A DNA stretch of 63,897 nucleotides, counting the filler, from Olpidium bornovanus S191 (Eukaryota; Fungi; Olpidiomycota): the NCBI GenBank assembly GCA_017911155.1. It is 25 parts of 25 records of this genome, joined end to end, with 100 filler letters (N's around TTAATTAATTAA, not from the genome) between each part and the next. Parts side by side here need not be neighbours in the genome. Positions count along the whole stretch, not along the records: positions 58,397 to 62,398 come from JAEFCI010004524.1; 24 more parts are not named here. One strand, written 5' to 3'. The notes under the pieces were generated by a model. That model had not been told where the DNA came from, did no database searches, and worked only from the letters and a program-made list of their open reading frames with translations. Both the position numbers and the translations under genes were made by a program. Shown here one piece after another: positions 58,782-60,338 of this stretch. Each line of letters begins with the position of its first letter. Positions within the stretch are counted from its first letter, which is position 1.

Positions 58782-60338
58782 ATGCTCTTCTCGTCGTCCC
58801 GGCGGGCGGCCATCCTGGCACGGCTGCAGTGCTGGCAGGCGCCGCTCGCCAGGGCCGCTCGCACCGCCCCACCGGCCGCGACCGCGGTCTCCGCCGGCCC
58901 GGCCCCCGCCACGCCCGGCCGCCGGCGGAACCCCCCCGTCAGGTTTCTCGGCGGCGCTGCGGCGGAAGCCGCCCACCCGGCCTCGGATGCGGACGGCGGC
59001 GAGCCCGCCGCCCCGCCGCAGACGCCGCCGCCGGGCGGCGCCGCGTCTCCTCCTGCCGTTGACGGTCCGCCACGCACGCCGCGCCCCGCCTTCCTCTCGG
59101 ACGTCGCCGCCATGGACGAGCTGGGCGACCGGATCAAGGCCCTCGAGTCCGTGACGACTTCGGTGCGGTTCCCGCCGACGGCGCACTTCTGCGTCCGGCT
59201 GGACGGCGTAGGCTTTCACCAGCTGCCCCAGGGGTTTTTCAAGCCGTTCGACGAGCGGCTCCTGGACGCGATGATGTTCACGGCGCGGGACGTGCTCGAG
59301 AAGTACGACGCGGCGTCCCTGGCCTACGTGGAGAGCGACGAGATCACGCTGCTGTTCCCGTCGAGGCTGACAGCGACCGAGGACGGGGACCCGGACCCGC
59401 TGCCGGTGGGGCTAGCGACGGGGGATGCAGAAGCGCTCGAGGAGCTGTGGGAGGAGGAGCAAGACGGGGCGAACCCGGCTGCGGCGGCGCCGGGAAAGTG
59501 CCCGAAAAAGGAGGCGGCGAAGAGGGCGAACCTGCGGCGCCGGAAGCGGGCCATGGCGCTGGCCATGGCCAGGGGGGAGGAGAAGCTGGACGATTACGGT
59601 TTCACCCACCCGTACGGCGGGCGGGTATTCAAGCTGCTGTCAACGACGGCCGCCTACGCCGCCACGCGGTTCAACCACCACCTGAGCAGCCTGTGCAAGG
59701 ACGTCCCCGTCCGCGAACGGCACGTCGCGCCACCCCCGGCCTACGCGGAAGGGCAGGCCAGGCCCACGACCCACGACTACCTCGCGCCGCTGACCGAATC
59801 GACGCTGCGCAAGGCCAGGTCCCACACGGCCATGTTCGACTCGCGGGCCTTCGAGGTGCCCGACCTGGCCACCCTCGCCGACTGCGTCTACTGGCGCTCG
59901 TCGCACGACTGCATCCGCAACGCCGTCAACGGGCTCGCACGGTCCCAGTTCTCGCACCGGAGGCTGAACGGCGTGCCCTTGCGCAGGGCCATCGAGATGC
60001 TCGCCGCCGAGAGGGGCATCGACCCCGAGACCCATTTGCGGCCGCGCGCTATGTTCGGCACGTTCATCAAGCGCCACTGGTGCGAGGTCCGACCCGAGGA
60101 CCTGGCCGGCACCGTCACCAACGAGCCGCCGGGAGTCCCGGTATACCGCACCCAAATCAAGTGCGCCCCCGTGAACTGGAAGGACTGGACGCCAGAGGCG
60201 CGGAGCAAGTTTGCTGCGGCAAAGTACTGGCCCGCGCAGGGAGTGCCCGGCGAATTTCCCGCCCACGGCGCGCCTGCCACGGTCTTCTTCGGAAAGCGAG
60301 GGTCCAACTATTCGCCCACTTTGCCCTTGGAGGCGTAG
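58782..60338 (+). CDS. Thg1-like protein (TLP), tRNA 3'-5' polymerase / guanylyltransferase superfamily, single exon, 518 aa with ~110-aa N-terminal leader
   Basis: MDELGDRIKALE, CVRLDGVGF...FKPFDERLLDAM, AYVESDEITLLF, GRVFKLLS..A.YA..RFN, AMFDSRAF, YWRS.HDCIRNAVN, FGTFIKR. Catalytic DG and SDE motifs intact. Confidence 0.92.
   Translation: MLFSSSRRAAILARLQCWQAPLARAARTAPPAATAVSAGPAPATPGRRRNPPVRFLGGAAAEAAHPASDADGGEPAAPPQTPPPGGAASPPAVDGPPRTPRPAFLSDVAAMDELGDRIKALESVTTSVRFPPTAHFCVRLDGVGFHQLPQGFFKPFDERLLDAMMFTARDVLEKYDAASLAYVESDEITLLFPSRLTATEDGDPDPLPVGLATGDAEALEELWEEEQDGANPAAAAPGKCPKKEAAKRANLRRRKRAMALAMARGEEKLDDYGFTHPYGGRVFKLLSTTAAYAATRFNHHLSSLCKDVPVRERHVAPPPAYAEGQARPTTHDYLAPLTESTLRKARSHTAMFDSRAFEVPDLATLADCVYWRSSHDCIRNAVNGLARSQFSHRRLNGVPLRRAIEMLAAERGIDPETHLRPRAMFGTFIKRHWCEVRPEDLAGTVTNEPPGVPVYRTQIKCAPVNWKDWTPEARSKFAAAKYWPAQGVPGEFPAHGAPATVFFGKRGSNYSPTLPLEA

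What the first reader, a model, noticed from the sequence alone, without database searches (positions are those of the whole stretch)
58782..60338. Prokaryote-type Thg1-like 3'-5' polymerase with a mitochondrial-type leader: candidate organellar tRNA 5'-editing/repair system
Seen in the sequence: LGDRIKALE at the domain start, SDEITLLF, GRVFKL and DCIRNAVN in place of the HINNLYN motif. These features mark the TLP clade rather than canonical eukaryotic Thg1, and the metal-binding DG and SDE residues are intact. The gene has no introns in an intron-dense genome. An Arg/Ala/Ser-rich, acid-free N-terminus (MLFSSSRRAAILARLQCWQAPLARAART) precedes a second in-frame ATG at 59112 exactly at the domain start. 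Established: TLPs add Watson-Crick-templated nucleotides 3'-to-5' to truncated tRNA 5' ends, act in mitochondrial tRNA 5'-editing in Dictyostelium, and such editing is known in some chytrid mitochondria (e.g. Spizellomyces). Inference: this organism edits or repairs mitochondrial tRNA acceptor stems, possibly using dual mitochondrial and cytosolic isoforms from the two ATGs.
Basis: partly seen in the sequence, partly recalled or inferred. Interest (0 to 1): 0.85.

Follow-up and report, generated by a model that had tools for sequence, protein, structure and literature searches.

The report
Olpidium Thg1-like reverse RNA polymerase gene
This is a real, expressed, intron-free gene of the root-parasitic zoosporic fungus Olpidium bornovanus; it encodes a Thg1-like 3'-5' RNA polymerase of the tRNA 5'-end-repair type with a mitochondrial-looking leader, which makes it a sound but unproven candidate for mitochondrial tRNA 5'-end repair or editing and a new member of a known enzyme family, not a new kind of system.

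Summary

The piece is a whole 4002-bp contig of the metagenome-binned Olpidium bornovanus S191 assembly. The protein is a repair-type TLP, not a canonical Thg1:
- A clade profile scores the Bacillus TLP 4kgk at 6e-47 and Thg1 structures at 1e-16 to 1e-19.
- It has KPFD where Thg1 has KPND.
- The three Thg1-specific HINNLYN residues are absent.

It sits inside a clade of chytrid TLPs (UFBoot 95, SH-aLRT 91), so it looks vertically inherited.

Residues 1-27 form an Arg-rich, acid-free predicted helix, followed by a disordered Pro/Ala linker. Four of five chytrid orthologs annotated from a downstream ATG have an in-frame upstream ATG that would add a similar basic, acid-poor leader; a fifth ortholog is annotated with one. 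The clade also shares a variable loop insert ending in a Lys/Arg cluster.

Mitochondrial import is plausible, about 0.55. Mitochondrial tRNA 5'-editing in Olpidium is untested, because no mtDNA was reachable.

The public 740-aa gene model is chimeric.

The parts
58760..60443 (+). Transcribed region of the TLP gene as seen in an RNA-run contig; colinear with the DNA, no intron
   Evidence: X2 record 2 (1711 nt) lies on 58760-60443 with 5 differing letters and no gaps. RNA runs of four samples hold 0.80-0.82 of the sampled words of 58600-60500, which fits this extent.
58782..60338 (+). Coding sequence, 518 codons plus stop; first ATG of the transcript (context ACGAAAATGC)
   Evidence: GC3 is 0.90 over the whole CDS, 0.88 in the leader and 0.87 in the insert.
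58782..58862 (+). Residues 1-27: Arg-rich (5 R), acid-free predicted helix; presequence-like segment
   Evidence: composition. (AF2 helix 5-27, pLDDT 63-69); only 2 Pro+Gly in the first 30 aa (p=0.003 against dinucleotide shuffles) and 8 hydrophobic residues (p=0.04).
58863..59078 (+). Residues 28-99: Pro/Ala/Gly-rich linker, mostly modelled at low confidence (pLDDT under 50 for 27-75, rising to about 70 by residue 100), with no counterpart in relatives
   Evidence: low-confidence segment 27-75; block means 37-50 for residues 21-80, 58 for 81-90 and 71 for 91-100; the 117 relatives have a median of 11 aa ahead of the domain and none has a similar extension.
59082..59147 (+). Residues 101-122: conserved N-terminal helix of the zoosporic-fungal TLP clade (PxSAxxALxxMY..LGxRxKxLE in chytrids)
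   Evidence: alignment block. (helix 108-123, pLDDT over 80).
59112..59114 (+). Second in-frame ATG (M111), context GCCGCCATGG; aligns with Met1 of bacterial TLP 4kgk and with the Met of the chytrid 'MY' motif
   Evidence: One weak-context out-of-frame ATG lies between the two starts, at 58987 (55-aa ORF ending at 59154).
59193..59357 (+). Catalytic palm core: R139 and D141 (VRLDG), K154-P155-F156-D157 (KPFD, TLP-type), S185-D186-E187 (SDE)
   Evidence: invariant or nearly invariant columns. (roles of the equivalent Thg1 residues R27, D29, K44, S75, D76, E77 and the rule for X in KPXD). (coordinates).
59367..59597 (+). Insert 1 (residues 196-272) in the hairpin after the SDE strand: an acidic part followed by a basic helix
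   Evidence: 82 aa here against a median of 9 and a maximum of 57 in 117 relatives; helices 214-229 and 241-263, pLDDT 50-82; a homologous variable insert of 11-93 aa across the chytrid clade.
59505..59549 (+). Lys/Arg cluster K242-R256 inside insert 1; NLS-like or RNA-binding patch
   Evidence: in that listing most of the 26 chytrid-clade relatives (my count of the printed inserts, roughly 18-21) end the insert with a K/R cluster (KKRKR, KKRRK, KKKVKK and similar), mostly 5-17 aa before the conserved HxY(S/N)GR. In the query the spacing is about 23 aa.
59619..59681 (+). GRVFKL (K284, equivalent to Thg1 K95) and RFNHH helix
59694..59795 (+). Insert 2 (residues 305-338), Pro-rich loop
   Evidence: 37 aa against a median of 9; pLDDT 67-80.
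59835..59930 (+). FDSRAF (D353, R355) and the WRSSHDCIRNAVN helix (R372, D376, N380); the Thg1-specific H152, Y157 and N158 of HINNLYN are replaced by I378, N383 and G384
   Evidence: (alignments).
60174..60233 (+). C-terminal NWKDW...KYWP motif shared with chytrid TLPs (NWADW...K(F/Y/H)WP)
   Evidence: P0267, P0268, P0274. (clade consensus).
60613..62215 (-). Convergent neighbour gene, not part of the TLP: 5 coding exons (62215-61872, 61562-61491, 61299-61194, 61073-60992, 60809-60613), 266 aa
   Evidence: RNA contigs of X1 and X2 show CT..AC joints at 61073/61194, 61299/61491 and 61562/61872; the fourth intron and the reading frame.

Best explanation
A nuclear, intronless, transcribed gene of Olpidium bornovanus encodes a catalytically intact Thg1-like protein (TLP) of the repair type. 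TLPs activate the 5' end of an RNA and add Watson-Crick-templated nucleotides in the 3'-5' direction to 5'-truncated tRNA acceptor stems.

Shown here: family, subtype, intact active-site residues, transcription, gene structure, and membership of a zoosporic-fungal (chytrid) TLP clade.

Inferred:
- Translation starts at the first AUG (58782).
- The resulting 518-aa protein carries a presequence-like helix (residues 1-27) and a disordered linker that direct it to mitochondria.
- There it repairs the 5' ends of mitochondrial tRNAs: 5'-editing of mismatched acceptor stems if the Olpidium mt-tRNA genes have them, otherwise 5'-end quality control.

The clade-specific loop insert with its Lys/Arg cluster is either an RNA-binding extension or a nuclear localisation signal.
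For: Family and subtype:
- PF04446, E=1.8e-22.
- Single sequence against PDB: bacterial TLP 4kgk 9e-14, Thg1 chains 2e-6 to 1e-5.
- Clade profile against PDB: 4kgk 5.9e-47, archaeal TLP 5axk 1.3e-22, Thg1 chains 1.5e-19 to 4.7e-16.
- Thg1/TLP fold.
- KPFD with an aromatic X, and loss of H152, Y157 and N158 of HINNLYN, which the literature gives as the Thg1/TLP discriminators.
- All 12 columns invariant in the 118-sequence alignment, which includes this protein, carry the family residue here, and 17 of the 18 nearly invariant columns do (the exception is P149).

Expression and structure: an RNA contig covers 58760-60443 colinear with the DNA.

Origin:
- The contig is JAEFCI010004524.1 of the O. 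bornovanus S191 assembly.
- Every one of the 20 best non-self hits that a source names is a chytrid protein; 10 of the 20 are named.
- In the careful tree the query plus 26 chytrid-clade rows form a clade at UFBoot 95 / SH-aLRT 91.

Leader:
- 9 Arg and no acidic residue in the first 61 aa.
- Predicted helix 5-27.
- The first 30 aa are unusually poor in Pro/Gly and rich in hydrophobic residues for this GC-rich stretch; jointly reached by 0.03% of shuffles.
- Cladochytrium's ortholog is annotated with a 104-aa presequence-like extension.
- Four of five orthologs annotated from a downstream ATG have an in-frame upstream ATG giving a basic extension with 0-2 acidic residues. The same is true of 0 of 7 neighbouring genes in the same loci and 3 of 35 control genes in all (Fisher p=0.010 and 0.0018).

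Precedent: AcaTLP2 has a predicted 44-aa targeting signal, and DdiTLP2 and DdiTLP3 are mitochondrial. 5' tRNA editing is documented in chytrid mitochondria.
Against: - No localisation predictor or experiment was available.
- Arg/Ala richness, lack of acidic residues and an open frame are roughly what an 82% GC sequence gives by chance.
- A 72-aa Pro/Ala linker behind the helix is unusual for a presequence.
- The clade-wide Lys/Arg cluster looks like a classical NLS, which points to a nuclear or cytosolic role.
- TLP orthologs occur across many chytrid orders, so the gene's presence alone does not predict editing.
- No Olpidium mitochondrial genome or tRNA data could be reached, and the held literature says nothing about it.
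- The assembly is binned from non-axenic material, so the attribution to Olpidium rests on the binning plus the tree.
- Whether the upstream ATGs of the orthologs lie on their mRNAs is unknown.
Confidence: 0.55

Rival explanations
1. The protein works outside mitochondria, as a cytosolic or nuclear 5'-end repair or surveillance polymerase like Dictyostelium TLP4. On this reading the N-terminal extension is a compositional by-product of a GC-rich 5' region with no targeting role.
For: - Most of the clade ends the loop insert with an NLS-like K/R cluster.
- Most relatives have only about 11 aa ahead of the domain.
- Acid-free, Arg-rich sequence and an open frame are common in shuffles of this region.
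- DdiTLP4 is cytosolic, essential and acts on non-tRNA RNAs.
Against: - The transcript includes the first ATG, which has A at -3, so scanning should start there.
- The first 27 aa are a distinct helix-competent segment.
- Presequence-like extensions recur upstream of the conserved start in 5 of 6 chytrid orthologs but rarely in control genes.
Confidence: 0.25
2. Two isoforms are made from one gene, as for yeast tRNA enzymes that use alternative in-frame AUGs. The long form (from 58782) goes to mitochondria. A short form (from 59112) stays in the cytosol or enters the nucleus through the Lys/Arg cluster.
For: - The second ATG has a strong context (GCCGCCATGG) and aligns with Met1 of bacterial TLP 4kgk.
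- The only intervening ATG is out of frame and in weak context.
- Chytrid orthologs show an upstream ATG with a leader, plus a conserved Met before the PxSA motif.
- The NLS-like cluster is retained.
Against: - Olpidium has no Met at the conserved short-form position. M111 lies about 10 residues inside the clade's conserved N-terminal helix.
- The first ATG has A at -3, so leaky scanning should be inefficient.
- The contig data give no evidence of a second transcription start.
- The yeast comparison comes from my own knowledge and was not tested here.
Confidence: 0.2
3. It is a mitochondrial tRNA-His G-1 adding enzyme like Dictyostelium TLP2, not a general repair enzyme.
For: DdiTLP2 is a mitochondrial TLP with this job. 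This protein has a presequence-like leader.
Against: DdiTLP2 is set apart by lacking K44/P45 of the KPXD loop and by having Arg in place of D150. This protein has KPFD and D376, like the repair-type TLPs.
Confidence: 0.05
4. The gene is not Olpidium's own: it is either a contaminant contig from the non-axenic sample or a recent transfer from a giant virus or a bacterium.
For: - The assembly was binned from mixed DNA.
- The gene is intronless.
- Mimivirus and phage TLPs appear among distant hits.
- The same DNA occurs in soil metagenomes.
Against: - It nests with chytrid TLPs and apart from the mimivirus, Dikarya and bacterial clades.
- GC3 of 0.90 resembles the intron-rich neighbour's 0.80 on the same contig.
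- The chytrid orthologs also have 0-2 introns.
- Olpidium-like organisms in soil would explain the metagenome hits.
Confidence: 0.04

Closest known systems
Chytrid Thg1-like proteins (uncharacterised database entries, e.g. Polyrhizophydium stewartii KAL2911668.1, Cladochytrium replicatum KAI8803967.1, Gonapodya sp. KAJ3337744.1, Rhizoclosmatium globosum ORY40140.1)
   Same: - Same clade (UFBoot 95 / SH-aLRT 91), at 33-43% identity.
- Shared N-terminal helix motif, the C-terminal NW(A/K)DW...(F/Y)WP motif, and a variable insert after the SDE strand ending in a K/R cluster.
- Few or no introns.
- A presequence-like 5' extension in several members.
   Different: - The Olpidium protein sits on a long branch (1.1-1.3 changes per column).
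- Its insert 1 (87 residues between F192 and G280) is among the longest in the chytrid clade, where it ranges from 11 to 93 residues, and longer than in any of the 117 relatives compared.
- It has a 110-aa leader with a long Pro/Ala linker.
- It lacks the conserved Met in front of the PxSA motif.
- None of these proteins has been studied experimentally in the literature I could search.
Acanthamoeba castellanii AcaTLP2 and Dictyostelium discoideum DdiTLP3 (mitochondrial tRNA 5'-editing and repair TLPs)
   Same: Nuclear-encoded eukaryotic TLPs with N-terminal mitochondrial targeting. They perform templated 3'-5' repair of 5'-truncated mt-tRNAs. The same diagnostic residues apply: KPXD with an aromatic X, and no HINNLYN.
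   Different: Orthology was not tested because their sequences could not be obtained. They did not appear among the listed hits. Neither the long loop insert nor the K/R cluster is mentioned for them in the passages of these papers that I read.
Bacillus thuringiensis TLP (PDB 4kgk, 4kgm)
   Same: It is the best solved-structure match by sequence (9e-14 with the single sequence, 5.9e-47 with the clade profile). Same fold (TM by target 0.68-0.78). Its Met1 aligns with M111.
   Different: It is a 245-aa bacterial protein with no leader and no inserts. It lacks the RFNHH and NWxDW motifs of the eukaryotic clade.
Canonical eukaryotic Thg1 (human 3otb, Candida 3wbz, yeast 5xox)
   Same: Same fold and the same two-metal active site: D29, D76 and E77 correspond to D141, D186 and E187.
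   Different: - 14-19% identity.
- KPFD instead of KPND.
- H152, Y157 and N158 of HINNLYN, which are needed for non-templated G-1 addition opposite A73, are absent.
- No PF14413 (Thg1 C-terminal domain) hit.
[quoted passage not shown]
   Same: A repair-type TLP. It is a possible model for a non-mitochondrial role of the chytrid clade.
   Different: DdiTLP4 has no targeting leader. Its relationship to this clade was not tested.

Membership tests
Thg1/TLP superfamily (3'-5' RNA polymerases, PF04446) | Significant match to the Thg1 catalytic-domain profile | tested here: met
   PF04446 E=1.8e-22, 80.1 bits against a cut-off of 29.2.
Thg1/TLP superfamily (3'-5' RNA polymerases, PF04446) | Palm-like fold of solved Thg1 and TLP structures | tested here: met
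   AF2 model with core pLDDT over 90. Foldseek E about 1e-12 and TM by target 0.66-0.78 to 3wbz, 4kgm and 3otc.
Thg1/TLP superfamily (3'-5' RNA polymerases, PF04446) | Metal-binding carboxylates (D29, D76, E77), adenylylation residues (K44, S75) and R27, K95, D128, R130, R147, D150, N154 | tested here: met
   By alignment these are D141, D186, E187, K154, S185, R139, K284, D353, R355, R372, D376 and N380. The residue list comes from PMC12632743.
TLP subtype (templated 5'-end repair enzymes), as opposed to canonical Thg1 | Closer in sequence to characterised TLPs than to Thg1 | tested here: met
   The clade profile scores 4kgk at 5.9e-47 (164 bits) and 5axk at 1.3e-22, against 62-74 bits for Thg1 chains. 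The single sequence gives 9e-14 against 2e-6 or worse.
TLP subtype (templated 5'-end repair enzymes), as opposed to canonical Thg1 | X of the KPXD loop is not Asn (often aromatic); Thg1 always has N46 | tested here: met
   K154-P155-F156-D157.
TLP subtype (templated 5'-end repair enzymes), as opposed to canonical Thg1 | Absence of the Thg1-specific HINNLYN residues (H152, Y157, N158) | tested here: met
   The motif reads DCIRNAVNG, with I378, N383 and G384 at those positions.
TLP subtype (templated 5'-end repair enzymes), as opposed to canonical Thg1 | Watson-Crick-templated 3'-5' addition to 5'-truncated tRNA; no G-1 addition opposite A73 | not testable with these tools
   This needs recombinant protein and a phosphatase-protection assay of the kind used in PMC3561963.
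Mitochondrial tRNA 5'-editing system (AcaTLP2 / DdiTLP3 type) | Enzyme located in mitochondria | tested here: inconclusive
   The leader is presequence-like and leaders recur in orthologs. No predictor or experiment was available, and the composition is partly explained by GC content.
Mitochondrial tRNA 5'-editing system (AcaTLP2 / DdiTLP3 type) | mt-tRNA genes with mismatches in acceptor-stem pairs 1-3 that are corrected in the mature tRNA | not testable with these tools
   No Olpidium mtDNA or tRNA data could be reached, and the literature search found nothing. There is no tRNA gene on the piece.
Mitochondrial tRNA 5'-editing system (AcaTLP2 / DdiTLP3 type) | Orthology to AcaTLP2 or DdiTLP3 | not tested
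   Their sequences could not be obtained. They are absent from the listed hits.
DdiTLP2 type (mt-tRNA-His G-1 addition) | Loss of K44/P45 in the KPXD loop and Arg in place of D150 | tested here: not met
   KPFD and D376 are both present.

The most novel reading that the evidence does not exclude
Zoosporic-fungal TLPs form a distinct, dual-localised class of 3'-5' polymerase. An upstream AUG adds a mitochondrial presequence, a conserved downstream AUG gives a short form, and a Lys/Arg cluster in a clade-specific disordered loop takes the short form into the nucleus. One gene would then serve both mitochondrial tRNA 5'-editing and nuclear or cytosolic RNA 5'-end repair. Olpidium has lost the conserved short-form AUG and so would be shifted toward the mitochondrial form.
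Probability: 0.25. Interest if true: 0.6.

Novelty: new member of a known kind. Interest (0 to 1): 0.45.

Why it matters
The enzyme behind 5' tRNA editing in chytrid-type fungal mitochondria has never been identified, although the activity was characterised biochemically in Spizellomyces. This work does three things:
- It places a well-supported candidate in Olpidium.
- It defines a chytrid-wide TLP clade, with a recurring presequence-like 5' extension and a loop insert carrying a Lys/Arg cluster, that could be tested directly.
- It corrects a chimeric public gene model, so that the right protein would be expressed.

It remains an extension of what is already known from Acanthamoeba and Dictyostelium, not a new mechanism.

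Tried and rejected
- The first profile search (A2) was dominated by bacterial TLPs and returned only unnamed metagenome proteins. The word-indexed searches missed the chytrid orthologs altogether; only the exhaustive representative search found them.
- NCBIfam gave no hit.
- The Swiss-Prot AlphaFold library holds only canonical Thg1, so it could not separate the TLP subtypes. Fold comparison in general does not separate Thg1 from TLP.
- Raw reads of runs X19 and X22 gave no reads on the piece, so there is no read-level evidence on transcription starts.
- Two metagenome scans gave no close relative. The 14 loci of the second scan lack the clade's NWxDW motif and could not enlarge the ortholog sample.
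- Pfam and PDB searches with single exons of the neighbour gene gave nothing. I did not submit its spliced 266-aa protein because it has no reference.
- Green alga and Acanthamoeba were considered as the source and dropped once the contig was identified.
- I rejected 'open reading frame' and 'acid-free' as evidence for the leader after the shuffle control.
- A Thg1-rooted phylogeny, and a comparison with the AcaTLP and DdiTLP sequences, could not be done because those sequences were not obtainable through the tools.
- Rfam, tRNA and tandem-repeat scans of the piece found nothing relevant.
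Full report
**Observation.** The piece 58397-62398 holds an ORF at 58782-60338 (+) of 518 codons. 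Pfam finds the Thg1 catalytic domain (PF04446, E=1.8e-22). An AlphaFold2 model built on 118 aligned relatives has a core pLDDT above 90. It matches solved Thg1 and TLP structures with TM by target 0.66-0.78.

**Gene structure and expression.** A 1711-nt contig assembled from RNA run X2 lies colinear on 58760-60443, so the gene is transcribed and has no intron. The mRNA starts at least 22 nt upstream of the first ATG. RNA runs of four samples hold about 0.8 of the sampled words of 58600-60500, which fits that extent. The convergent neighbour on the minus strand has four GT..AG introns in 266 codons, so 'intronless beside an intron-rich gene' is correct. It is not very unusual for this family, though: the Cladochytrium ortholog has no intron, and the Polyrhizophydium and Gonapodya orthologs have one or two.

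**Source.** The exhaustive representative search returned a 740-aa protein that is 100% identical over residues 1-507. Its encoding contig is JAEFCI010004524.1, exactly 4002 bp, from GCA_017911155.1. This is the Olpidium bornovanus S191 assembly, binned by a metagenome approach from non-axenic zoospores washed off cucumber roots (PMC7865070).

The public model (window 58657-61304) is chimeric:
- Its first 27 residues come from an upstream exon that no RNA contig covers.
- Its last 233 residues are read from plus-strand ORFs antisense to the neighbour gene, whose real transcripts are spliced on the minus strand.

**Thg1 or TLP.**
- The single sequence matches the Bacillus thuringiensis TLP 4kgk at 9e-14 and Thg1 chains only at 2e-6 to 1e-5.
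- A profile of the eukaryotic relatives scores 4kgk at 5.9e-47, the archaeal TLP 5axk at 1.3e-22, and Thg1 chains at 1.5e-19 to 4.7e-16.
- The literature gives two discriminators. Thg1 always has Asn at X of the KPXD loop, whereas TLPs often have an aromatic residue. H152, Y157 and N158 of the Thg1-specific HINNLYN motif are needed for non-templated G-1 addition (PMC6471195; PMC12632743). This protein has KPFD, and I378, N383 and G384 at the three positions.
- The residues that set the unusual DdiTLP2 apart (no K44/P45, Arg for D150) are not seen here.
- All catalytic and conserved family residues listed are present by alignment.

It is therefore a repair-type TLP and most probably an active one. 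Enzyme activity itself was not tested.

**Relatives.** The word-indexed searches found only distant relatives at 34% identity or less: patchy Dikarya (Mycena, Fusarium), mimivirus, Reticulomyxa and many metagenome proteins. The exhaustive search then showed that the best non-self hits (33-43% identity) are chytrid proteins. These come from Polyrhizophydium, Blyttiomyces, Nowakowskiella, Cladochytrium, Irineochytrium, Rhizoclosmatium, Gonapodya, Phlyctochytrium, Synchytrium and Caulochytrium. In a careful tree the query plus 26 chytrid-clade rows form a clade (UFBoot 95, SH-aLRT 91). In the quick tree the query is sister to all the others. That position fits a zoosporic fungus outside Chytridiomycota and argues for vertical descent over recent transfer or contamination.

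The clade shares three features:
- an N-terminal helix motif, (M)PxSAxxALxxMY..LGxRxKxLE;
- a C-terminal NW(A/K)DW...(F/Y)WP motif;
- a hypervariable insert of 11-93 aa in the hairpin after the SDE strand.

In most members the insert ends in a Lys/Arg cluster (KKRKR, KKRRK, KKKVKK and similar), usually a few residues before the conserved HxY(S/N)GR. In Olpidium the insert is 77 residues long with the cluster at K242-R256, modelled as two helices of moderate confidence. The cluster could be a nuclear localisation signal or an RNA-binding patch; I could not tell which.

**The leader.** Residues 1-61 hold 9 Arg and no acidic residue. Residues 5-27 are modelled as a helix, and residues 28-99 are a Pro/Ala-rich linker modelled at low confidence over most of its length (pLDDT under 50 for 27-75). 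Dinucleotide shuffles of the 330-nt leader region act as a control:
- 79% of shuffles have no stop codon, so the open frame is not evidence.
- 15% stay acid-free as far as the real sequence does, so that is not evidence either.
- The first 30 residues are unusual: 2 Pro+Gly (p=0.003) and 8 hydrophobic residues (p=0.04), jointly reached by 0.03% of shuffles.

So a distinct helix-competent, basic segment sits at the very N-terminus, as in a presequence, but this is a resemblance and not a prediction from a trained tool.

Comparative evidence helps. The Cladochytrium ortholog is annotated with a 104-aa extension that is basic and acid-free for 53 residues. Four of the five orthologs annotated with a short N-terminus have an in-frame upstream ATG that would add 19-53 residues with 2-8 Lys/Arg and 0-2 acidic residues. 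These four are Polyrhizophydium, Rhizoclosmatium, Phlyctochytrium and Synchytrium. None of 7 neighbouring genes in the same loci has any such ATG, and 3 of 35 control genes in all meet the criteria. Fisher p is 0.010 and 0.0018. Whether those upstream ATGs lie on the mRNAs is unknown.

**The second ATG.** M111 has a strong context (GCCGCCATGG) and aligns with Met1 of the bacterial TLP. In the chytrid clade, however, the conserved short-form Met stands just before the PxSA motif, about 10-13 residues further upstream. Olpidium has no Met there, and M111 is the Met of the 'MY' motif inside the conserved helix. Dual isoforms are thus better supported for the chytrid relatives than for Olpidium itself.

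**Function.** Established knowledge from papers read here:
- TLPs repair 5'-truncated tRNAs by templated 3'-5' addition.
- DdiTLP3 is the mitochondrial 5'-editing polymerase, DdiTLP2 adds G-1 to mt-tRNA-His, and DdiTLP4 is cytosolic (PMC5041481).
- AcaTLP2 has a predicted 44-aa targeting signal (PMC3561963).
- 5' tRNA editing occurs in Spizellomyces and monoblepharidalean mitochondria (PMC4284800; PMC4991717).

My inference is that the Olpidium enzyme is imported into mitochondria and repairs mt-tRNA 5' ends. I rate import at about 0.55 and true editing of mismatched stems lower, because no Olpidium mtDNA or tRNA data could be reached. TLP orthologs are also spread across many chytrid orders, and whether these edit was not established here.

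**Verdict.** The finding is real and correctly classified, and its functional reading is reasonable but unproven. It is a new member of a known kind. The modest added value lies in the clade-wide leader-plus-insert architecture and in the corrected gene model.

Noticed in passing
window 58657-61304 (public model P0266; locus L008 261-2908): The deposited 740-aa gene model for this locus is chimeric. It adds an upstream exon (58657-58695) that no RNA contig covers. It also skips the true stop codon to join plus-strand ORFs that are antisense to the neighbouring gene. RNA contigs support a 518-aa protein.
   Followed up: yes
window 60613-62215 (-): The convergent neighbour gene has 5 coding exons, with 4 introns of 120-309 nt and T- or A-runs inside the introns. 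It encodes a 266-aa protein with a Gly/Ala/Arg-rich N-terminus, hydrophobic segments that by eye resemble the MscL channel, and a C-terminal CxCPxC...CPxC zinc-ribbon-like motif. Single-exon searches in Pfam and PDB gave nothing. The public model (342 aa) differs from the RNA-supported one.
   Followed up: partly
window 59226 (codon 149): The assembly has Pro at a position where at least 90% of 118 family members have Thr. The RNA contig of run X2 reads ACC (Thr) there. The two other differences between contig and assembly that I translated are synonymous (K119, V143). This is either a strain variant or an assembly error at a conserved residue.
   Followed up: partly
L002-L004 (about 8400-12700 in L002) and L006 (6322-11227), L007: In two fairly distant unnamed eukaryotic lineages the TLP gene sits between a TRM2-like tRNA U5-methyltransferase gene and a GidA/MTO1-type tRNA modification gene. 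This is a conserved neighbourhood of tRNA enzymes.
   Followed up: no
L010 (1-2686) and L011 (1-153): A NOC3p gene lies just upstream of the TLP gene in both Gonapodya and Polyrhizophydium, which hints at local synteny among chytrids.
   Followed up: no
P0005 (693 aa) and P0271 (832 aa, Irineochytrium): Some relatives carry long N-terminal additions. P0005 has a PF13350 tyrosine-phosphatase-like domain fused ahead of the TLP domain. The Irineochytrium model has about 500 extra N-terminal residues, which may be a fused gene model.
   Followed up: no
L026-L028 (metagenome contigs, about 790-1350 in L026): Another TLP, outside the chytrid clade, has a basic Ser/Arg-rich extension of about 60 aa. 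It is followed by a Met placed exactly at the domain start (MDDTLGNKMKEYE), the same two-Met layout as in the window.
   Followed up: no
window 60942-60989 and 62347-62381: There is a 48-nt T run inside the last intron of the neighbour gene, and a 35-nt A run preceded by GAA repeats at the contig end, next to the neighbour's 5' region.
   Followed up: no
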